Shown: positions 1,335 through 53,978 of the stretch, one piece after another
How the letters are laid out: the number at the start of each line of letters is the position of its first letter
Position numbering within the stretch: the stretch's first letter is position 1
Assembly (NCBI GenBank): GCA_965202585.1
Contig: CBDBBG010000051.1
Span: forward strand, 62,001 to 125,204
Origin: Thalia democratica
Taxonomy: Eukaryota
Length of the DNA: 63,204 nt
Direction of reading: 5' to 3'
Program-made: the position numbers and the translations under genes
Notes under the pieces: generated by a model
The model's input: only the letters and a program-made list of their open reading frames with translations
Told to the model about the DNA's origin: nothing
The model's database searches: none

Positions 1335-1880
1335 ACAGTCTTGAAAGTTTATGTTGATAATCTATACTATTTCTCATGCAAATTCTTTAAAAAATGTTTT
1401 TAATTTATCTTCTAATTCATCATATAATGCATTCATTGTACTTACAGTCTTGAAAGTTTATGTTGATAAAATATACTATCTCTCATGCAAATTCTTTGAA
1501 AAAAGTCTTTATTTTATCTTCTAATTCATCATATAATGCATTCATTGTACTTACAGTCTTGAAAGTTTATGTTGATAATCTATACTATTTCTCATGCAAA
1601 TTCATTGAAAAAGTCTTTATTTTATCTTCTTATTCATCATATAATGCATTCATTGTACTTACAGTCTTGAAAGTTTATGTTGATAACATATACTATCTCT
1701 CATGCAAATTCTTTGAAAAAAGTCTTTATTTTATCTTTTAATTCATCATATAATGCATTCATTGTACTTACAGTCTTGAAAGTTTATGTTGATAATATAT
1801 ACTATTTCTCATGCAAATTCTTTGAAAAAATTCTTTATTTTATCTTTTAATTCATCATATAATGCACTCATTATACTTAC
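1335..1880. repeat. Minisatellite, about 5 x 109 bp
   Basis: ACAGTCTTGAAAGTTTATGTTGATAA recurs at 1335, 1444, 1553, 1661 and 1770 (periods 109/109/108/109). Confidence 0.95.
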
Positions 1881-4110
1881 ATGATGCTATAAAAAAATCA
1901 TCAAGAGGCTTTAAAAACTTGCATCTCAGTCTTTGAAATCTTTAAAACATCATTGTAAAGTGAACTGAGTAGAAAAAATTTAAAAGAATTCTTTTGAAAA
2001 TCTTTTGAACTTCTGTAAAATTTTAAAACTTCTAGGTTGTTTCAAATCCTTTGTCTTTATAAGTTGTAACTGTAGCTTTCTCCTCCATGTTGGGTTTAGG
2101 CAATGGATCACACTTTTTTGGATTCTGATTGAAGATTAGTACCTACTACAGCAGCTGTTGAGGTTAGTTTGTTTAATAGTTAATCAGGTTGTTTTAATTT
2201 GTGCAAAACTTAGTATTTTTTGCTAGGGTTACCAGTCAGACTATTGAATATCAAAGTTAAGGATTTTTGGATATTATAATAAAACTTGATATTTTGTCTC
2301 AACTTTTTACTTATTAATATTTGAGTCCTTTTGTTACTATTAAGTTTTTGGAGTGCTCATCCTTGAATAACATAAAGCTTTAGATGTTAATTAAGTTTTG
2401 CACAAATTCAGACTAGCACTTTTATTAACAGAATGGTAATCTTGGTTTGTACCATTAACGTATATTTGTCTTGTTGGGCTTCATTCTCCTAAGATTACTT
2501 GGCTACCTCAATAAAAAGCTTAAAGAAGACTCAAAAATAAATAAAATCATTAAAAAGTAGCAACATTTGTGTTAAAATTTATGAGCTTGTATAAAGAAGT
2601 GTTGTATTCATGAATGAAGCTCAAAGAGACAGTAAGCTAAATGTAGAAGTTTATTTACAACATAAAATTCAAGTTAATTAATTTTGATTGTATTAATGTA
2701 GTTTATATATTCATAGATTAATGATTTGTAAAAAGAAGTACTTCTTAAATTGTGCATAAAAGATAAGTAGCAAGAGTAATTATAAAACAAAGTGTTATTA
2801 GTTTCATAGATTGTTTTTTTTACAAAAGAAAACAGTTAAACCATATCAGGATTAGGTTTGCTAGTAAACAAAATGTTCCAAAATTGTAAGTTTACATTCA
2901 TATATTTACAAAGCAGTTCACAGCAAGCAAAATTTAAAAGTTGTTAGTGCATATGTGTATTGGGTTTATTCTTACCTTTGTTTAATTTTTTTATTCTTCT
3001 ATCACTAACTTCTTTCTCTTCTTTTATCTATCAATAATTTCTTTTGTTCATATGTTTGCACTAATAAGCTTTTGACAACAACTTGCTGTACTGTTTTTTA
3101 TGTATATGACAAATTTAAAGACTAAATTTTGGGAATACTATAAATATTAGTTTAATAGAGCCATGAAGATTTTAAGTGATGTTAAATGCAGAGTATTTAA
3201 GATGCAAGTATTTGACAAAATTTAAAATGAACTACATGCTACCAAACATATGTTATTGACACAAAGTAGTATGGTTTAACTGTTTTAGTTTGTGACAATG
3301 TATAAAAAAGATAAATTGAAATCAGAAAATGTCTTTATTTTATATGCACAATTTAAGAAACAGACAATAAGTTGTTTTAATTCAATTGTTAGTACACTAA
3401 GCATTCAAAGTTTAAGTCTATTATTAAATATATGAAGTAAATTAAAGACTACCAGTTAGTAAATAGTAATGGTAGTAAAAGTGCATGAGAAACCTTTGTA
3501 GTTAATAGATTGGTAGATAGTTACTTAACAATTAGCCCAACGTAACTGTCATGGAAAACTTTAGCTTATGTAAGTTACATGTAAAATGATATCCTGTAGT
3601 AGGAACAGTACAAAACTGAAGTTAAACAAAAAAAACAAACAATTTTTTACATTATGTTCTTTGACAAAAACATATTTGTTACTGAAATCTAAATAAATTC
3701 AACCTGTTTAGTTGAATCTTAAGTGTTTATTTATTTTTGAATAACTAAAGTTTTATACTGTTTTGAATAGATTATAAAAGTAAATCAATTTACGTAAGCA
3801 AGTTAACTGACTATTGTTTGAATATAAATAGAGTACAGTTCAATCATATAAATAGATTTGTGTATGTACACATTTAAAAAATCTGTAGTTTCATATTAAT
3901 CTTTCTTTTTTTATTTGCTTTATTTTCTGTCATTGAAAAGCACACCTATCTATGAGATTGATGAACTGTTTTCTATGTACATGTAAAACATTAGGTAATT
4001 AACTAGGATAATGTAATATCTTAAACTATATTCATTTAATTTAGGCTGTACTAAACCATAACTAAAGAATGCAATTATAACTAAGTCAATACATCTATAA
4101 GGTTTATTCT

Positions 4111-11000: not shown

Positions 11001-12920
11001 GTTAAACAAAACTCAGAATTAGTTCAAAAGTGAGTTTTACTAATGATTTATTTTTTCCCTCTCAAAAAAATTAGATAAAATTTTAGTCAATATTTCATTG
11101 ATGTTACTGTAGAGTTTTTTAGAAGTTTTTTTTGATGTTTGTACAGGTTCTTAAATGAATTTTCTAATGTTTATTTGTAAGTCTAATTTGTTATTATACT
11201 TTAAATTTATTATTTCTTAATTTGATACTCCTTTGATAAATTTTGGTTGAAAAAAGGTTCCTGGATTGAAGTGTATGTTTTACTCATGATTTATTTTACC
11301 TTAACAAGACTAAAGTCAAATCCAGCTTTATATTTCTAGTTAACACTTGATTGTTTTGTTGCAGTAAAATTATTTAAAAGTTTATTTAAAAACAAATCTA
11401 CGGGTTCTCTTCAGTTAATGATGTTTGTGTATAATCCTAGTTTGTTGTTACATTGTATTTTTTTGTCAAGTAATTTAGTACTACTTCTAGCCCAAGGTTA
11501 ATTATATATATTTATATTTAAGGTGTATTTTGTATTTTTTGAAAATCTTATAGGGTCGTTAAAGGTAGAATAAATATTGATTTATAAATAAAAAAACTCT
11601 AGATTAACTAAAATACATGTTTCACTCTTAACGACATTAAATTGTATCAAACTTCGTATGTTTAGATAGCTTATGACTGTCAAATTATTTGAAATTTTGT
11701 TCAACCTGAAGTAATAGCGTTATTGTTAATTCAGCCCAAAGCTAATTATATATTGAACATAATTTTATTTTTTTTAACAGACAGGTTTAAACTAAAAGTA
11801 AAACTTAATGTTTTATAGTATATATCCTTGGTGTTGTACTATGAATGATGCAGTTTTATAGTAGACAACCTTGGTATTATTCTATAAGTAACACAACAGT
11901 TTTGCGTTGTAGTTTAGTTTATTAGTATCTATCTAGTATTGTAATTTAATTATTTTATGGTATTTACTGCTAAGTCTCATAAATAGCAAACAAAGTTTTA
12001 GTTAAGTATTTAGTTATACTTTAGATGTTTGTTTATAAAAGTCAGTAAAAAGTTGTTCATGTCACTTTTTATTTTAATTTCAATTAGATAAACAGTTAAT
12101 ACTACGTATTTTTATAACGTAAATTTCATAAGCAACCACATGGATTAATTTCACAATAAAAGCAATGTTTTAACGATTCAACAGTTTTAAATAAATATTG
12201 TATTTAAATTTGTTAAAATTAATTTGTAATCGATTTTAGATATTATATTTTAGTAGCAAATGATAAGACAAGAGTGACTAACTAAAACAATAGCTATTTC
12301 AATTACATTATGTTACAGTTCGTCTATTTATAAAAGTTTACACCAATAAGTCTTGTTTTCACGTAGACTAAAATTTAATTATATCACTATTTTAGTTTAA
12401 TTACAATAAAATTTTAACAACTTATAATACTTGTTAAAATTTAAACTAGCCTTAGCTCTATGTTACCAATCTAAGAAATTGACAATATAGACTACATTAG
12501 TAATGTTTAAGTAAGTAGTGAGAGTTAATTTATTTTCATTTTCTATATTTATACTTATTTTTGGTTTAAAGCTTTTCTTTGGTCTTAAAACAAACATCAT
12601 ATTATACTGTTAGTAAATTATTAAACTTTCCATTTTATTAGTTATTTTATTGTAATATTTTTTTACCCAAATACTTTTAGATCTTCTTAATCGTTGAAAT
12701 GACGTAACAATCAAATTATCTGATTTTAATTTTATTTATTCACTTCTTTTACTAAAGCACTATATTTTTTTTTCTTATAAACTGTTTAAATTTTATCTTT
12801 TTATTAAATCAATTTTTTTAGTTATACATGACAATCAAAACCTTGTAAAAAACTGATTAATAATAATTTTAATAATAGTAATATATCTACTTAACGTTTT
12901 TTAAAGTTCAGACTTATAAC

Positions 12921-13800
12921 TTACTAGTTAATAATGAATTTATAACTAAATGAATAAATATTGTCTTGAAGTAACATCGTTTAAGTTCAACATCGTTTAA
13001 TAAGTTAACTGTCTTTGAAAGGTATAATAGCCTCAAAGTTCGTAAAAGTTGTATTTATATACTACTTTTTTATTCATCTATGGTACTGTGCTTATTCCAA
13101 AAAAAAAATCTTACTAGCTATTAATGAATTTATAACTAAATGAATAAATATTGTCTTGAAGTAACATTTAATAAGTTAATTGTCTTTGAAAAGTATAAAA
13201 AGCCTCAAAGTTCGTAAAAGTTGTATTTATATACTACTTTTTTATTCATCTATGGTACTGTGCTTATTCCAAAAAAAAATCTTACTAGTTATTAATGAAC
13301 TTATAACTTAATGAATAAATATTGTCTTGAAGTAACATTTAATAAGTTAATTGTCTTTGAAAGGTATAAAAAGCCTCAAAGTTCGTAAAAGTTGTATTTA
13401 TATACTACTTTTTTATTCATCTATGGTACTGTGCTTATTCCAAAAAAAAATCTTACTAGTTATTAATGAACTTATAACTTAATGAATAAATATTGTCTTG
13501 AAGTAACATTTAATAATTTAATTGTCTTTGAAAGGTATAAAAAGCCTCAAAGTTCGAAAAAGTTGTATTTATATATTTACTACTTTTTTATTCATCCATG
13601 GTACTGTGCTTATTCCACAAAAATAATCTTACTAGTTATTAATGAACTTATAACTTAATGAACATTTATTGTCTTGAAGTAACATCGTTTAACAAGTTAA
13701 CTGTCTTTAAAAGGTATAAAAAGCATCAAAGTTTCTTTAATGTTGTATTTTTATAATACTTTTATAATCATCCATGGTAATGTGATTATTCTAATAAAGT
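12921..13800. repeat. Minisatellite, about 5 x 171 bp
   Basis: TTACTAG...AATGAATAAATATTGTCTTGAAGTAACAT starts at 12921, 13111, 13282, 13453 and 13629 (periods 190/171/171/176). Confidence 0.93.
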
Positions 13801-15960: not shown

Positions 15961-16134
15961 TTATACGTACTTTTGTATGTGTTGTAAAAATAAAATATAT
16001 TTTTGAAAACAAACAATTAGTATCCTACTTCTAAAAAAATCGTTCTATCTATAGAATATAAATTTTAAAATTAATTTAAAGACAATTATTGTTAGAAGAG
16101 TAGAAGAAGGATAAAAAATTCAGGAAGTAAACTA

Positions 16135-16618
16135 ATCATTATAAATATAAAGTTTAATTGAGACCTCAATTTAAACGAATCATGAGATGCTTTATAATCA
16201 AGTATCACAAAATATACTTAAAATTTAATATAAATTACAAACGCGATTATTTAAAATTGTATTAAGCATATTTTTTTGATAAAATGATACTAATCATTAT
16301 ATATATAAAGTTTAATTTAGACCTCAAGTTAAACGAACTCTGAGAAGCTCAATAATCAAACATCACAAAACATATTATAAATTTAAATTACAAACGAGAT
16401 TCATTAAAAATGCATTAGGCTTTTTTTTTGATAAAAATAAACCAATCAATATGAATATAAAGTTTAATTTAGACCTCAAGTTAAACGAATTATGAGATGC
16501 TCCATAATCAAGTACACAAAATATACTTCAGACTTAAATTAAGTTACAAACGAGATTTATTAAAACTGCATTAAGCATATTTTTTGATAAAATAATACTA
16601 ATCATTATAAATATAAAG
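16135..16618. repeat. Minisatellite, 3 x about 155 bp, with a solo copy at 15055-15180 (also 43977-44460)
   Basis: TATAAAGTTTAATT(T/G)AGACCTCAA(G/T)TTAAACGAA at 16146, 16304 and 16456. The related AAGTTAAACGAATTATGA...ATTAAGCACATTTTTTTGATAAAA lies at 15064-15175. Confidence 0.88.
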
Positions 16619-17579
16619 ATTTACGTTCTACTCTAGTTTGGCAAGATAATTTAAACTTGAAAAGTGCTTTATCACCCATTCAAGTTTATTAAAAATATTA
16701 AAAAATATAAAAAATTTGTAATTTTTTTTTATTTCTAGACACAATTTTATTTCTAATTAATGTATAGTTTTATTTTGATAGACTTGTTCAACGAAACTAA
16801 TTAACAATTACAAAAACAAATACATTGTACATTGTCGTTTTATTTGATGTAAGCATTCAAAATAGTTATTGGTACATGATACTATCTTGGTTAGGTGTGA
16901 TATAATTAACAAGTTTTATAAAAGAGCTATTAAAAGCAATTAAACACGTAAATTAAGAAAATAAAACTGTACGCGTAAGATTTCATATTGATTAATGAAA
17001 CAAAAGACACTCAAGTTTACCATCAAAAGGTCGAGTTTCGAACGAAAACTTTGTTCGGTCTTATTCAAAACTATTTTTATTTTCTCACAAAGAAACCATT
17101 TATAACATTTTGTTTAAATTTTTGCAATCTATTTTTTAATGAAGTTCAAGAGAAAACTTCTAAATATGACCAAACACAAACCTTCATACGTTGGTTGTTG
17201 AGTTCCTGAAGGAAATGAGCGCTGTGTTGCGAGTTAGAACACTGTCATCAAATTTTATATAAGCGCAATTAAATGTAAACACCCATAAGAATTTTTAGTA
17301 TGTAAATTTCATTAAATGAAAACATTAAATAACTTACAAAATGTATATATAATTTGACAAAAGTATTGTTAAAGCTTTATCTTATATTAAATAATTCTAC
17401 AAGATTGTGAAACATCATTAGTTTTATACCAAAACATAATTTTAATAAAATTAACTTAGCCTTAAGACTTCACAGTTGTATGGTAAATAGATTTTTTATC
17501 AAAATAATTCATTATGGTATTGTTGCGTCATATTTCGCTAGTCAGAATTATACTCCTGAGGAATGCAGCTTAAACGTGT

Positions 17580-17653
17580 GGCCGGTTAGCTCAGTTGGTT
17601 AGAGCGTCGTGCTAATAACGCGAATGTCGCGGGTTCGATCCCCGTACTGGCCA
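17580..17653 (+). tRNA. tRNA-Ile (anticodon AAT)
   Basis: Full cloverleaf: acceptor GGCCGGT/ACTGGCC+A, anticodon arm TCGTG-CTAATAA-CGCGA, B box GGTTCGATCCC, T7 terminator at 17656-17662. Confidence 0.96.
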
Positions 17654-17655
17654 CA

Positions 17656-17662
17656 TTTTTTT
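17656..17662 (+). terminator. Pol III oligo-T terminator of tRNA-Ile, overlapping tRNA-Asp nt 1-2 (also 45498-45504)
   Basis: Run of seven T starting 3 nt after the Ile discriminator base. Confidence 0.75.
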
Positions 17663-17732
17663 CTCGTTAGTATAGTGGTGAGTACTCCCGCCTGTCACGC
17701 GGGCGACCGGGGTTCGATTCCCCGACGGGAAG
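17661..17732 (+). tRNA. tRNA-Asp (anticodon GTC), variant
   Basis: Acceptor TTCTCGT/ACGGGAA+G, anticodon arm CCCGC-CTGTCAC-GCGGG, T arm CGGGG-TTCGATT-CCCCG. Confidence 0.93.
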
Positions 17733-17913
17733 ATTTCTGCATACTTAGTTTGTTAGAACCGGCATTTTTATCCATTTAGTATTTAATAGTAACAATTATA
17801 ATATCATAAAGTCTATCAAATATTTTTTTTAATTTATCTAATAGTTTTCTAACAAGTGTTATAAGAAAGAACATTTTTAAGTATATAAAGTAATTAATGA
17901 GTTATTTGAATAA

Positions 17914-17987
17914 GTCTTCGTGGCGCAATCGGTTAGCGCGTTCGACTGTTAATCGAAAGGTTGGTGGTTCGAGCCCACACGAGGACG
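17914..17987 (+). tRNA. tRNA-Asn (anticodon GTT), with a G49:A65 T-stem mismatch
   Basis: Acceptor GTCTTCG/CGAGGAC+G, anticodon arm TTCGA-CTGTTAA-TCGAA, T arm GGTGG-TTCGAGC-CCACA, T4 at 17991-17994. Confidence 0.92.
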
Positions 17988-21569: not shown

Positions 21570-23106
21570 ATTTTATGGATTCAGTAGATAATTTACAAAC
21601 AATTTTTGTAATCAAATAATTTATTCAAAACTACTGACTTTAGAATATATTATCAAAATAAAAACTATTTAAATTAGCTTAAAAAAGTAAATAAATATTT
21701 TGTTTAAATGATAAATTTTATTTAAACAAACTCATAATAACACATTAGCATTTATTTATCGTTAAGTATGTTATCAAAAAACTATCCAAAATATTGCGAA
21801 TAAATTTATGATTAGTAATAAAAGTAACTGAAGCTTCTAATACAAGCATGAAATACTTTGCAAAAACTTATATTACAATAGCAGAACTTTATAAAAACAT
21901 CAGTTACTACACATAGTATGCTATAAAACTTTTTTAATATTTAACACATTAGAAATTTGATTTGAAAAACTTAAATTCAATCCAAGAATTGAATATCTTT
22001 TAGAAGATACTTGAAAAATTTAAGTTATAAGTTTATTCATTGTATATTCCAAAAACACTTATTCTGGTATTTAGAAAACATTTAAATCGAAAAAAGGTTA
22101 AACTAAAAGCTGTTGTTGTAGTGCAATTTTACAAAGTTTAAATATTTTAACTCAATAATGAAATAAAAAAGGTTACATCATATTAAAGTAGAAACATTGA
22201 AATACGAAAATTAAACAAAAGTTTTTAAACTTAATTTAATAACAGTTTTCTAAATAAACTGCATGATAAATTATGAACTCTCTAACTATAAAACTTCAGA
22301 AAATTATCATACCTTGAAACAATAAGTACCTAAACTCTCCAATAAAAGGTTGACACGACTTGAAGAAAAACAAGTTACCATTGTTTTAGAGAAGTTAGTA
22401 AAAATACTGCTAATTAACCTTGAGTACCTAAAAATATCATTAAGATAATAAAGCTACTTAATATTTGAAAGGCAAAGATGCTTATTAAGAAACAAAACAT
22501 TTCTAAAACATAAAAACAAGACTTATTTTAAAGGTCAAGAAACATTTTAAGCAAATTAAACTTAGTTTTTTTTTGTTAATTAAAACAAGCCTGAATTTTT
22601 TATTTACTCAGAAAAGTTATGTGTGGCAACCATGCTACGAGTTCTAAACGAATTTAAATAGATGATTAATTTTTATTTAATTGAAATTGAATAACTGTTG
22701 TGTCATAAATTTGGAACCAGTAGAAAACTTATGTACTCAATAGAGCTTTGTATATCACTCAAAATTATAGAAAGACGGTGCAAAAAAAGTTCTCTTAGTT
22801 TTTAATATTAACTTAAGTTTAAAACTTGGAAAAATGTCATGATCAAAAAAATTATCACTTACTTCAACATGTATAAAAATATTTCTGTCAAGCTTGTTTT
22901 CAGATAAAATACTTACAAAATTTCTTCTATTAGCAAAAAAGCTTAAATTTTTTCTGAGAAATATACTATCATACTTGCAAAGCATTTTTTGTTTTAAACT
23001 TCTCAATCAATACGCAGGTAAAACATTAATTAAAACATACTGAATAAAATAGTAATATGATCGTGCTAAAATGCTTGCGTTCAACATTACAACAAATCAA
23101 ACATTT

Positions 23107-23678
23107 TCACGATTTAAACAAGCAGCTGAACAGTTTGGGCACCAGAACGGGCATCAACCCGGCAACCACAGCCACGATCATGTTCTTGTGCTCCCACAAA
23201 AACCCCCTGTTGCGAGAACGCCACTTTTCATGCACTTCCGCCATCCGCTCGCGACTCCTCCTGCTGATGTTCAGGCACGGCTCCACCTCCTCCAAACCGC
23301 ACTCTCCGAGCAGGGAAATCCCCGACAGCCCCATGTAGCTGTGGAGGGGGTCGGCGTGGACCTGCGGCCACTTGCCCATCCCCCCGGTCAGCGGGTCCTG
23401 GGTGGAGAGGACAAAGTGGACGGCTTCTTCCTTGGACACCGCGTCGAGGTGGCCGACAATCTTCAGGGTGGATCCGATCCAGAAGGTGTAGCAGGTGTCG
23501 TCGTCCTTGTGCGGTCGGCCGTGGAACCCGCACCGCTGCCGCCACAGCAGCCAGTTGGTCAGCTTGTCCATCTTGCTTCCGCCCAGCACCTCGTCCAGCT
23601 TGCCCATCATCTTCAGCGAAGCCACCGCGCAGAACGTCGACCCGCCGTGGCTCTCGTTGCATCGTCCCTGGCCGAAAC
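23107..23678 (-). CDS. PGGT1B: GGTase-I beta, coding exon 3 (copy 1); spliced CDS 1128 nt, 375 aa
   Basis: Acceptor ACGACAG|GT joins in frame to give GFGQG..ESHGGSTFC...HGRPHKDDDTCYTFW (Zn ligands D, C)...GGMGKW...DPLHSY (Zn ligand H)...LNIS. TGA stop at 23109-23107. Confidence 0.95.
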
Positions 23679-23887: not shown

Positions 23888-24084
23888 CTCCGTCGTAGGA
23901 GAAACTGCTCGCGATGAACTCACACGCTTTTGTGACGTCGACGCACGAGAAGTCGTTGAGTATGGTGCACACGCACATGGCGCAGTACATGAACCTCATG
24001 TCCCTCTCGCCATTTTCCACGCACATCTCCTTGAAACCACCGTCTTCCAGCTGGAGGGCTCTGATGCCTTCCAAGCAGCCTTTT
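23888..24084 (-). CDS. PGGT1B: GGTase-I beta, coding exon 2 (copy 1)
   Basis: Acceptor CAACAG|A joins in frame to give RKGCLEGIRALQLEDGGF...DMRFMYCAMCVC...SYDG. Donor G|GTTAGT (phase 1). Confidence 0.95.
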
Positions 24085-25777: not shown

Positions 25778-26136
25778 CTGTCAACTCTTGACAAGTCATC
25801 CCCCAATATCAGCAATATCGACAGGGCGCAGTAAGTCATGGCAACGTGGGACGTGTTGTTTCCATTATCACACGCCCCATTAGAATCCCCTCCCATGAAA
25901 CCGCACCTGTGCAAGTTGTCCCCGCTCTCATTGGATACTATCTGCAGCGAGTATATCCAATCGACAAGCTCTTCCTGATCTTTCAACACGTGGAGGGAAT
26001 CCAACACGTCCAATGCCGACACGCAGAAGAAAATGATGGTGAGGCGTTGCGAGTCGAGCACACACATCTGGCTGGGCAGGGTGTTGAGGACCCGCGTGAA
26101 GTACTTGACGTGCTTCTCCTTGTAGAAATCACTCAT
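25778..26136 (-). CDS. PGGT1B: Geranylgeranyltransferase type I subunit beta, coding exon 1 (copy 1)
   Basis: MSDFYKEKHVKYF...RLTIIFFCVSALDVLDSL...WIYSLQ...RCGF...HVAMTYCALSILLILGDDLSRVD aligns with recalled PGGT1B. Donor AG|GTTTGT (phase 2) at 25778/25777. Confidence 0.95.
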
Positions 26137-26185
26137 GTGTTCGTTTTAATTTAAATTTTGCAATAATCTGTATGCAAAAGGTAGA
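26137..26185 (-). promoter_or_regulatory. Splice acceptor 31 nt upstream of the PGGT1B ATG, implying an upstream 5'-UTR exon (also 53979-54027)
   Basis: Minus strand CTACTTCTACCTTTTGCATACAG|ATTATTGC...AACACATG: a pyrimidine tract plus CAG with the AG at 26169-26168. Confidence 0.65.
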
Positions 26186-50948: not shown

Positions 50949-51520
50949 TCACGATTTAAACAAGCAGCTGAACAGTTTGGGCACCAGAACGGGCATCAAC
51001 CCGGCAACCACAGCCACGATCATGTTCTTGTGCTCCCACAAAAACCCCCTGTTGCGAGAACGCCACTTTTCATGCACTTCCGCCATCCGCTCGCGACTCC
51101 TCCTGCTGATGTTCAGGCACGGCTCCACCTCCTCCAAACCGCACTCTCCGAGCAGGGAAATCCCCGACAGCCCCATGTAGCTGTGGAGGGGGTCGGCGTG
51201 GACCTGCGGCCACTTGCCCATCCCCCCGGTCAGCGGGTCCTGGGTGGAGAGGACAAAGTGGACGGCTTCTTCCTTGGACACCGCGTCGAGGTGGCCGACA
51301 ATCTTCAGGGTGGATCCGATCCAGAAGGTGTAGCAGGTGTCGTCGTCCTTGTGCGGTCGGCCGTGGAACCCGCACCGCTGCCGCCACAGCAGCCAGTTGG
51401 TCAGCTTGTCCATCTTGCTTCCGCCCAGCACCTCGTCCAGCTTGCCCATCATCTTCAGCGAAGCCACCGCGCAGAACGTCGACCCGCCGTGGCTCTCGTT
51501 GCATCGTCCCTGGCCGAAAC
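50949..51520 (-). CDS. PGGT1B: GGTase-I beta, coding exon 3 (copy 2)
   Basis: Same translation as copy 1, offset +27842. Confidence 0.95.
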
Positions 51521-51729: not shown

Positions 51730-51926
51730 CTCCGTCGTAGGAGAAACTGCTCGCGATGAACTCACACGCTTTTGTGACGTCGACGCACGAGAAGTCGTTG
51801 AGTATGGTGCACACGCACATGGCGCAGTACATGAACCTCATGTCCCTCTCGCCATTTTCCACGCACATCTCCTTGAAACCACCGTCTTCCAGCTGGAGGG
51901 CTCTGATGCCTTCCAAGCAGCCTTTT
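51730..51926 (-). CDS. PGGT1B: GGTase-I beta, coding exon 2 (copy 2)
   Basis: Same translation as copy 1, offset +27842. Confidence 0.95.
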
Positions 51927-53619: not shown

Positions 53620-53978
53620 CTGTCAACTCTTGACAAGTCATCCCCCAATATCAGCAATATCGACAGGGCGCAGTAAGTCATGGCAACGTGGGACGTGTTG
53701 TTTCCATTATCACACGCCCCATTAGAATCCCCTCCCATGAAACCGCACCTGTGCAAGTTGTCCCCGCTCTCATTGGATACTATCTGCAGCGAGTATATCC
53801 AATCGACAAGCTCTTCCTGATCTTTCAACACGTGGAGGGAATCCAACACGTCCAATGCCGACACGCAGAAGAAAATGATGGTGAGGCGTTGCGAGTCGAG
53901 CACACACATCTGGCTGGGCAGGGTGTTGAGGACCCGCGTGAAGTACTTGACGTGCTTCTCCTTGTAGAAATCACTCAT
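53620..53978 (-). CDS. PGGT1B: GGTase-I beta, coding exon 1 (copy 2)
   Basis: Same translation as copy 1 in the ORF track, offset +27842. Confidence 0.95.

What the first reader, a model, noticed from the sequence alone, without database searches (positions are those of the whole stretch)
23107..23220. GGTase-I beta with a C-terminal hydrophobic tail: candidate membrane-anchored prenyltransferase
Seen: after the conserved ...LNISRRSRERMAEVHEKW the ORF continues 37 aa, RSRNRGFLWEHKN-MIVAVVAGLMPVLVPKLFSCLF-KS*. This is a basic linker, a ~22-residue apolar stretch (23181-23116) and a terminal Lys. 28 of 37 tail codons end in G/C, like the rest of the exon and unlike the AT-rich UTR, so it is not a recent stop read-through. 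Established: GGTase-I is a soluble cytosolic FNTA/PGGT1B heterodimer, and the recalled human beta subunit ends in a short hydrophilic tail. Inference: a tail anchor (moderate hydrophobicity with basic flanks suggests mitochondrial outer membrane, peroxisome or ER) tethering prenylation to a membrane. I know of no described animal example; combined with tandem amplification, this is the best candidate for a new system here.
Basis: partly seen in the sequence, partly recalled or inferred. Interest (0 to 1): 0.82.

Follow-up and report, generated by a model that had tools for sequence, protein, structure and literature searches.

The report
Tail-anchored GGTase-I beta, tunicate-wide
The gene for the beta subunit of a normally soluble lipid-attaching enzyme (geranylgeranyltransferase I) ends in a transcribed, conserved, membrane-anchor-like helix; this helix is in every tunicate version recovered and in no other animal sampled, which suggests tunicates tether the enzyme to a membrane.

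Summary
A three-exon PGGT1B gene on the minus strand encodes 375 aa. After the last core helix come 37 more residues: a basic linker, a 22-residue apolar stretch (23181-23116) and Lys-Ser.

- **Transcription:** spliced metatranscriptome contigs from close relatives carry the tail to the same stop codon and continue into the 3'UTR.
- **Selection:** the tail is under purifying selection like the core (dN/dS 0.09 vs 0.07; 0.21 vs 0.23).
- **Distribution:** the tail is not special to this genome. All 13 full-length tunicate-type GGTase-I beta sequences recovered carry a homologous block, including Clavelina, Styela, Phallusia and a Ciona-like sequence. The block lies 1-8 residues from the C-terminus behind a variable linker, with invariant Ala-x-x-x-Gly and mostly Pro-Trp-x-Tyr. 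About 190 other animal sequences have none.
- **Structure:** AlphaFold2 gives one confident helix, residues 325-372.

Best reading: a tail anchor that tethers GGTase-I to an endomembrane, most likely the ER. Membrane insertion is untested, and this lineage's segment is the least hydrophobic of the set (two Pro, one Lys). No paper describing it was found. The tail predates the 27.8-kb tandem array, so nothing ties it to the amplification. The scan noted the same tail earlier on another copy of the array (s1-287226).

The parts
25778..26136 (-). PGGT1B exon 1 (Met1 to the first two bases of codon 120)
   Evidence: ATG at 26136 and a GT donor after 25778. The splice joint 24084>25778 is present in RNA contigs. 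PF00432 matches with E 8e-26.
23888..24084 (-). PGGT1B exon 2
   Evidence: Both splice joints are seen in RNA contigs X1/X2 and in transcript contig L004. PF00432 matches with E 2e-17.
23107..23678 (-). PGGT1B exon 3: second half of the alpha-alpha barrel, the tail and the stop codon (23109-23107)
   Evidence: PF00432 matches with E 8e-46. Rat GGTase-I beta matches with E 3e-51. The exon is collinear with L004 through the stop and into the 3'UTR.
23182..23220 (-). Basic linker of the tail (residues 339-351; four basic residues plus His, one acidic)
   Evidence: Read from the sequence. In relatives the linker is 10-30 residues long with only 12% mean pairwise identity.
23116..23181 (-). Hydrophobic, tail-anchor-like segment (Met352-Phe373), holding the invariant Ala355-x-x-x-Gly359 and Pro366
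   Evidence: Kyte-Doolittle 19-residue mean 2.07, hydrophobic moment 0.2. AF2 helix 325-372 with pLDDT 81-93 over the tail. The block is 40% identical across 13 tunicate-type sequences, with Ala and Gly invariant.
23110..23115 (-). Terminal Lys-Ser (the predicted lumenal or trans-side end)
   Evidence: Read from the sequence. Relatives have 1-8 residues after the conserved block.
23002..23106 (-). 3'UTR, collinear with transcript contig L004 of a close relative
   Evidence: A single blastn block covers 23685-23002 at 91.8% identity with no splice. It is also aligned to genomic contig L001.
50949..53978 (-). Second copy of the whole gene in the next 27,842-bp repeat unit (exon 3 50949-51520, tail 50952-51062, exon 2 51730-51926, exon 1 53620-53978)
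   Evidence: tblastn gives 100% identity for all three exons. The repeat units are 99.966% identical over 35,362 bases.

Best explanation
This is the orthologue of PGGT1B, the catalytic beta subunit of CaaX geranylgeranyltransferase type I, with an intact fold and intact zinc ligands. Its C-terminus is a tail anchor made of a basic cytosolic linker, one hydrophobic helix and a very short end. I infer that the helix is inserted post-translationally into an endomembrane. The ER is the most likely target, because the charge after the helix is not conserved and the next two CaaX-processing enzymes, RCE1 and ICMT, are ER membrane proteins. The enzyme, with its FNTA partner, would then work on the cytosolic face of that membrane. 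The tail arose once, before the tunicate lineages sampled here diverged. Its invariant Ala-x-x-x-Gly and frequent Pro-Trp-x-Tyr suggest constraint beyond plain hydrophobicity, possibly helix-helix packing in the bilayer. Shown here: the tail's presence, transcription, conservation, purifying selection and helical, hydrophobic, C-terminal character. Inferred: membrane insertion, the organelle and the functional consequence.
For: Identity of the enzyme:
- PF00432 covers all three exons.
- The best solved relative is rat GGTase-I beta: E 3e-51 against 2e-29 for RabGGT beta, and Foldseek TM 0.93, rmsd 1.8 A, 48% identity.
- Asp246, Cys248 and His298 are invariant in 70 sequences. By the +23 offset they correspond to rat 269, 271 and 321.

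The tail is real:
- Contig L004 (1262 nt) encodes the spliced 375-aa protein P0221, 97% identical to the window's, with the tail and 106 nt of 3'UTR.
- L005 encodes a 77%-identical protein with the tail.
- RNA contigs X1/X2 show both splice joints and cover the end of the CDS plus 3'UTR.

Selection (tail vs core dN/dS):
- 0.088 vs 0.068 against L004.
- 0.21 vs 0.23 against L001.
- 0.38 vs 0.14 against L005.

Conservation:
- 13 of 13 full-length tunicate-type sequences carry the block, and no non-tunicate animal in the listed hits does.
- Mean pairwise identity is 0.40 in the block, 0.12 in the linker and 0.59 in the core. Ala355 and Gly359 are invariant.
- Tail-bearers form one side of a 100/100 branch even when the tree is built from the core alone.

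Tail-anchor traits:
- The hydropathy 19-mer mean is 1.7-2.3 in all 14 sequences, with moment 0.1-0.3, and the best 19-mer ends 3-12 residues from the C-terminus.
- AF2 gives one continuous helix 325-372 with pLDDT 81-93 over the tail.
- RCE1 is an ER integral membrane protease (abstract of PMC5874806).
Against: - No dedicated transmembrane predictor or experiment was available.
- The window lineage's segment has Pro362, Pro366 and Lys367.
- A position-independent sum on the Hessa biological scale (values recalled from memory) gives about +4.6 kcal/mol here, against about +1 in ascidians. That is unfavourable for translocon-type insertion.
- Trp367, conserved in 9 of 13 sequences, is Lys in this clade.
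- I could not inspect the AF2 coordinates, so I could not check directly whether the helix points away from the core.
- A hydrophobic helix with a conserved small-x-x-x-small motif could also pack against a soluble partner.
Confidence: 0.5

Rival explanations
1. The tail is a functional helix but is not membrane-integrated. It binds a protein partner (FNTA, a substrate or chaperone such as a GDI-like factor, or the enzyme's own hydrophobic exit groove as a regulatory plug), or it sits only peripherally on membranes.
For: Two prolines and an internal lysine lie in the window's 22-residue stretch, and the insertion energy estimate is positive (+4.6 here, +0.8 to +6.8 across the set). Sequence-specific conservation (invariant Ala-x-x-x-Gly, Pro-Trp-x-Tyr) goes beyond what a simple anchor needs. 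GGTase-I has large hydrophobic lipid and product grooves (established knowledge from the 1N4P-series structures).
Against: The hydrophobic moment is low (0.1-0.3), so the helix is not amphipathic. Ascidian versions have 19 uninterrupted apolar or aromatic residues with hydropathy means of 2.1-2.3. Placement 1-8 residues from the C-terminus is kept while the linker varies from 10 to 30 residues, which is typical of tail anchors. AF2 extends the last core helix straight through the tail and does not fold it back.
Confidence: 0.25
2. It is a tail anchor, but it is targeted to the mitochondrial outer membrane or to peroxisomes and not to the ER.
For: Hydrophobicity is moderate and the N-terminal flank is basic in this lineage. 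Some ascidian ends after the block carry net positive charge, for example Lys...Arg-His in Phallusia.
Against: The charge after the helix is not conserved: Styela ends with a net negative stretch, Clavelina has +1, and the window has a single Lys. No known step of the CaaX pathway takes place on those organelles (established knowledge).
Confidence: 0.17
3. The tail is a non-functional extension: a stop-codon read-through, a gene-model artefact, or a feature of dead copies in the tandem array.
For: One DNA contig of a related organism carries a 201-base deletion within exon 3.
Against: Spliced transcripts carry the tail. The stop position is the same in four diverged taxa. dN/dS is 0.09-0.38. 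GC3 is 0.76 against 24% GC in the UTR. The tail is homologous to that of ascidian orthologues.
Confidence: 0.03

Closest known systems
Mammalian GGTase-I beta (PGGT1B; rat structure 1N4P chain B)
   Same: It has the same alpha-alpha barrel fold (TM 0.93, rmsd 1.8 A, 48% identity), the same zinc-ligand positions and nearly the same core length.
   Different: The mammalian protein ends about 16 hydrophilic residues after the conserved Trp and is a soluble cytosolic enzyme (established knowledge). The window protein adds a basic linker and a 22-residue apolar helix.
Ascidian 'geranylgeranyl transferase type-1 subunit beta(-like)' database records (Clavelina lepadiformis P0231, Styela clava P0233, Phallusia mammillata P0235, Ciona-like P0232)
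   Same: They carry a homologous C-terminal block with invariant Ala-x-x-x-Gly, Pro before an aromatic or Lys position, and a short end. They fall on the same 100/100 branch.
   Different: Ascidians have longer linkers (19-28 vs 10 residues) and Gly-Leu-Gly and Pro-Trp where the window has Gly-Leu-Met and Pro-Lys. Their segments are more hydrophobic (hydropathy 1.9-2.3; rough insertion estimate about +1 to +2 vs +4.6 kcal/mol). The names shown for these records do not mention the tail.
Tail-anchored enzymes with a cytosolic catalytic domain (for example cytochrome b5, PTP1B; from general knowledge, not tested here)
   Same: The architecture matches: a soluble catalytic domain, a flexible linker, a single C-terminal hydrophobic helix, and a few residues beyond it.
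   Different: They belong to unrelated families. No prenyltransferase is among the described examples found in the library searches.
RCE1 and ICMT, the ER-membrane enzymes of CaaX processing
   Same: They act in the same pathway, and they offer a functional reason for ER tethering. RCE1 is an ER integral membrane protease (PMC5874806 abstract).
   Different: They are polytopic membrane proteins unrelated in sequence. No physical link to GGTase-I is shown here.

Membership tests
GGTase-I beta subunit (PGGT1B, CaaX prenyltransferase beta) | Prenyltransferase alpha-alpha toroid domain over the whole protein | tested here: met
   PF00432 profile positions 1-100, 106-166 and 166-304 are matched by exons 1, 2 and 3. 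The AF2 model has pLDDT 92.8.
GGTase-I beta subunit (PGGT1B, CaaX prenyltransferase beta) | Closer to GGTase-I beta than to FTase beta or RabGGTase beta | tested here: met
   phmmer against the PDB gives 3e-51 for GGTase-I, 2e-29 for RabGGT beta and 1e-6 for FTase beta. Foldseek gives 1e-30 against 2e-19 and 9e-16. Named database hits are all GGTase-I beta.
GGTase-I beta subunit (PGGT1B, CaaX prenyltransferase beta) | Zinc ligands Asp, Cys, His (rat Asp269, Cys271, His321; residue identities from established knowledge) | tested here: met
   Asp246, Cys248 and His298 are invariant in the 70-sequence alignment. The offset of +23 to rat numbering comes.
GGTase-I beta subunit (PGGT1B, CaaX prenyltransferase beta) | Heterodimer with FNTA and geranylgeranyl transfer to CaaL substrates | not testable with these tools
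   This needs biochemistry. The alpha subunit is not in the window.
Tail-anchored membrane proteins | A single hydrophobic helix close to the C-terminus with only a short stretch after it | tested here: met
   The hydropathy 19-mer mean is 2.07 and the best 19-mer ends 4 residues from the end. The figures are 1.7-2.3 and 3-12 residues in 13 relatives. AF2 models a helix to residue 372 of 375.
Tail-anchored membrane proteins | No signal peptide or other transmembrane segment | tested here: met
   The only other 19-mer above the 1.6 threshold (residues 32-52) is a core helix of the barrel that superposes on 1N4P. The N-terminus aligns with soluble orthologues from residue 1.
Tail-anchored membrane proteins | Hydrophobicity sufficient for bilayer insertion according to a dedicated predictor | tested here: inconclusive
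   No DeepTMHMM or Phobius was available. A simple Hessa-scale sum is about +4.6 kcal/mol for the window and +0.8 to +2 for ascidians (scale values recalled from memory, no position term). Eisenberg mean hydrophobicity of 0.65 is borderline for the window and 0.77-0.85 for ascidians.
Tail-anchored membrane proteins | Post-translational insertion with the catalytic domain facing the cytosol | not testable with these tools
   This needs localisation, carbonate extraction and protease-protection experiments.

The most novel reading that the evidence does not exclude
Tunicates as a whole have converted the first, classically cytosolic step of CaaX geranylgeranylation into a membrane-bound step. 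GGTase-I would be held on the ER by a tail anchor whose conserved Ala-x-x-x-Gly face packs against RCE1 and/or ICMT, forming a membrane-bound three-enzyme CaaX-processing assembly. Tail-anchor-like ends on GGTase-I beta of a euglenid, chytrids and some unplaced eukaryotic sequences would then be independent inventions of the same solution.
Probability: 0.15. Interest if true: 0.8.

Novelty: new variant of a known kind. Interest (0 to 1): 0.6.

Why it matters
CaaX prenyltransferases are described as soluble cytosolic enzymes, and only the later processing steps (RCE1, ICMT) are membrane-bound. A membrane-tethered GGTase-I conserved across a chordate subphylum would be a natural experiment. It would show where Rho/Rac/Cdc42, Rap and G-gamma proteins can be lipidated, how the shared alpha subunit is divided between FTase and GGTase-I, and whether spatial coupling of the three CaaX steps brings an advantage. 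It can be tested directly in Ciona, where tagged constructs are routinely electroporated. It would also be a clean case of a soluble enzyme gaining a tail anchor by extension of its last helix.

Tried and rejected
- **JGI metagenome scan:** a scan with the exon 3 protein found no relative.
- **Runs X7 and X8:** laying their reads added no new species. Their few contigs are identical to the window.
- **ESM Atlas:** a search with the tail alone gave only low-score hits (0.61 or less) to prenyltransferase fragments, so it gave no lead on the tail's origin.
- **Literature:** six searches (tail-anchored or transmembrane with GGTase-I, PGGT1B, tunicate, Ciona, or protein prenyltransferase) found no description of a membrane-anchored GGTase-I.
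- **rDNA-type array:** I considered this for the tandem repeat. Rfam finds only three tRNAs.
- **Read-through or artefact:** rejected on transcript, dN/dS, GC3 and homology evidence.
- **CaaX-like motif at the enzyme's own C-terminus:** the Cys sits 6 residues from the end and is Tyr in P0001, so it is not conserved.
- **Not possible with these tools:** I used P0221 (97% identical, one conservative change in the tail) for the structure and full-length searches. I could not inspect AF2 coordinates. I could not obtain a tunicate FNTB or FNTA sequence to check whether their ends also changed.

Full report
**What is in the sequence**

The minus strand between 26136 and 23107 carries a three-exon gene in very AT-rich DNA. 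Exons are 45-65% GC and the flanks 17-30%. The exons are 26136-25778, 24084-23888 and 23678-23107, and together they give a 375-aa protein with a single terminal stop. All three exon products hit Pfam PF00432 in consecutive parts of the profile.

The exon 3 product matches rat GGTase-I beta at E 3e-51. It matches RabGGTase beta at 2e-29 and FTase beta at about 1e-6.

The rat alignment ends 3 residues past the conserved Trp, and the rat protein then has only 12 more residues. The window protein has 37 residues after that Trp: a basic linker (339-351), an apolar stretch Met352-Phe373 (23181-23116) and Lys-Ser. GC3 is 0.76 in the tail and 0.80 in the core, and the 3'UTR is 24% GC.

**Is the tail transcribed and translated?**

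Two marine metatranscriptome runs hold contigs about 93-95% identical to the window. These skip exactly the two predicted introns. One contig covers the last 44 bases of the CDS and runs on into the 3'UTR.

The 90%-identity cluster of a fragment found by protein search contains P0221, a 375-aa protein encoded on a 1262-nt JGI contig, L004. L004 is collinear with the window across the 5'UTR, all three exons, the tail, the same stop and 106 nt of 3'UTR, with no introns. P0221 differs from the window protein at 11 of 375 positions, and only one of these (Ile to Val) is in the tail.

A second transcript contig, L005, encodes a 77%-identical protein that also carries the tail. A Tara Oceans genomic contig, L001 (87% identical), keeps the tail and the stop in place.

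**Selection**

Nei-Gojobori estimates against the window are as follows:

| Comparison | Core dN/dS | Tail dN/dS | Note |
|---|---|---|---|
| L004 | 0.068 | 0.088 | dS about 0.2 |
| L001 | 0.23 | 0.21 | exon 3 only |
| L005 | 0.14 | 0.38 | dS near saturation |

The tail has few sites (about 86 non-synonymous). The direction is nonetheless consistent: it evolves as coding sequence under purifying selection. At short range the constraint is as tight as on the enzyme core, and at longer range it is looser.

**The tail is shared by the tunicate-type sequences**

A full-length search with P0221 gave a group of hits covering 97-100% of the query. All other animals covered about 90%.

The high-coverage group includes Clavelina lepadiformis, Styela clava, Phallusia mammillata, a Ciona-like sequence and nine unnamed environmental or transcriptome sequences. 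Every one ends in a homologous block.

A profile search built from these 13 sequences recovered the same set at 644 bits or more. The next non-fused sequences were a Ciona savignyi fragment truncated before the tail position (565 bits) and non-tunicate animals at 545 bits or less. No tunicate-type sequence without the tail turned up.

Across the 13 sequences:

| Region | Mean pairwise identity |
|---|---|
| Core | 0.59 |
| Linker (10-30 residues long) | 0.12 |
| Conserved block | 0.40 |

- Ala355 and Gly359 are invariant.
- Val357, Leu360 and Pro366 are each present in 10 of 13.
- Trp367 and Tyr369 are each present in 9 of 13. The window's clade and its sister clade have Lys at 367.
- Only 1-8 residues follow the block.

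The tail-bearers form one side of a 100/100-supported branch. This holds with the full sequences and with the tail and linker cut off, so it does not depend on the tail itself. A single origin before these lineages diverged is the simplest reading.

The window's organism falls inside this group. Its close relatives occur in ocean plankton metagenomes. I therefore infer that it is a pelagic tunicate. This is an inference, not something shown.

**Does the tail look like a tail anchor?**

- **Hydropathy:** in all 14 sequences the best 19-residue window has a Kyte-Doolittle mean of 1.7-2.3, above the classical threshold of 1.6.
- **Amphipathicity:** the hydrophobic moment is low (0.1-0.3) and the Eisenberg mean hydrophobicity is 0.54-0.85.
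- **Position:** the best 19-mer ends 3-12 residues from the C-terminus.
- **Flank:** the N-terminal flank is basic in the window protein.
- **Model:** AlphaFold2, run on P0221 with a 70-sequence alignment, gives mean pLDDT 92.8. It models one continuous helix from residue 325, the last core helix, to residue 372, with pLDDT 81-93 over the tail.
- **Core fold:** the core superposes on rat GGTase-I beta with TM 0.93, and all 346 resolved residues of that chain are aligned.
- **Catalytic residues:** the zinc-ligand positions are invariant, so the catalytic domain looks functional.

A soluble domain, a variable linker, one C-terminal apolar helix and a very short end together make the architecture of a tail-anchored protein.

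**Caveats**

I had no dedicated transmembrane predictor and could not inspect model coordinates. The window's own segment is the weakest of the set. It has Pro362 and Pro366, Lys367 in place of Trp, and Met in place of the second Gly. A crude position-independent sum on the Hessa scale, with values recalled from memory, is about +4.6 kcal/mol here and about +1 to +2 in ascidians. Tail-anchor insertion does not use the same threshold as translocon insertion, but this keeps a non-membrane role open.

**Mechanism proposed**

My best reading is that the beta subunit is anchored by this helix in an endomembrane with the catalytic domain in the cytosol. GGTase-I would then work at the membrane surface.

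I favour the ER for two reasons. First, the charge after the helix is not conserved: it is net negative in Styela, +1 in Clavelina and a single Lys here. That argues against peroxisomal or mitochondrial signals. Second, the next enzymes of the pathway are ER membrane proteins (RCE1: PMC5874806 abstract; ICMT: general knowledge).

The invariant Ala-x-x-x-Gly suggests helix-helix packing in the bilayer. That is an inference only.

The rivals are a non-membrane protein-binding or regulatory helix, targeting to another organelle, and a non-functional extension. The last is effectively excluded.

**Relation to what is known**

The enzyme is an ordinary member of the GGTase-I beta family on every feature I could test. 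What is unusual is the appended anchor.

Six full-text searches found no paper describing a transmembrane or tail-anchored GGTase-I. The library lacks most subscription journals, so this does not prove that no such paper exists. The tail-bearing ascidian sequences are already in public databases under ordinary names.

I therefore rate it a new variant of a known kind. It is a feature of tunicates as sampled here, not of this genome alone.

**Tandem array**

The window consists of 2.27 units of a 27,842-bp direct repeat at 99.966% identity. The two gene copies encode identical proteins.

Earlier notes of this scan place further copies upstream. One of them, s1-287226, describes the same tail on a copy about 60 kb before the window.

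The tail is far older than such a near-identical array. Whether the array reflects real copy number could not be settled, because I had no single-copy baseline for read depth.

Noticed in passing
window 1-63204: The whole window is 2.27 units of a 27,842-bp tandem repeat at 99.966% identity (1-35362 equals 27843-63204). Earlier notes place more units upstream. DNA contigs of the source organism cover the gene region at a uniform word depth of about 400-465. Minor variant contigs have depth 33-70. No single-copy baseline was available.
   Followed up: partly
window 17580-17987 (and +27842): There is a cluster of three tRNA genes on the plus strand in each repeat unit: Ile(AAT), Asp(GTC) and Asn(GTT). 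Rfam scores are 59-65 bits.
   Followed up: partly
window 1335-1881, 12920-13798, 16131-16623 (and +27842): Each unit holds internal short tandem arrays. Self-matches are offset by about 109, about 180 and about 158 bases, at 82-95% identity.
   Followed up: no
window 23246-23448: One DNA contig of the closely related 'organism B' skips 201 bases inside exon 3 and has 4 other letters in their place. The net change is not a multiple of three, which suggests that some array copies in that organism are broken.
   Followed up: no
window 26137-26167: The 5' end of transcript contig L004 is collinear with the 31 bases directly upstream of the ATG. Within that short reach there is no sign of the upstream 'cyclin K leader exon' proposed in note s1-271308. 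The contig is too short to exclude it.
   Followed up: partly
window 23002-23106; L001, L004: The 3'UTR is about as conserved between the window and its relatives as the coding sequence, despite being 24% GC. L004 matches 23685-23002, which includes the 3'UTR, at about 92% in one block.
   Followed up: no
P0117, P0032/P0344, P0068, P0008, P0013/P0343 (proteins): GGTase-I beta-like proteins outside animals also end in a hydrophobic, tail-anchor-like segment. They include Ploeotia vitrea (a euglenid transcriptome), Chytriomyces species (735 aa with a long insert) and three unnamed assemblies. These may be independent gains, or gene-model artefacts.
   Followed up: partly
L006-L011 (P0227 clade): In the sister clade of the window's lineage the gene is intronless on genomic contigs. 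On transcript contig L008 it starts 19 bases after a HIT-family ORF. This operon-like compact arrangement is reminiscent of appendicularians.
   Followed up: no
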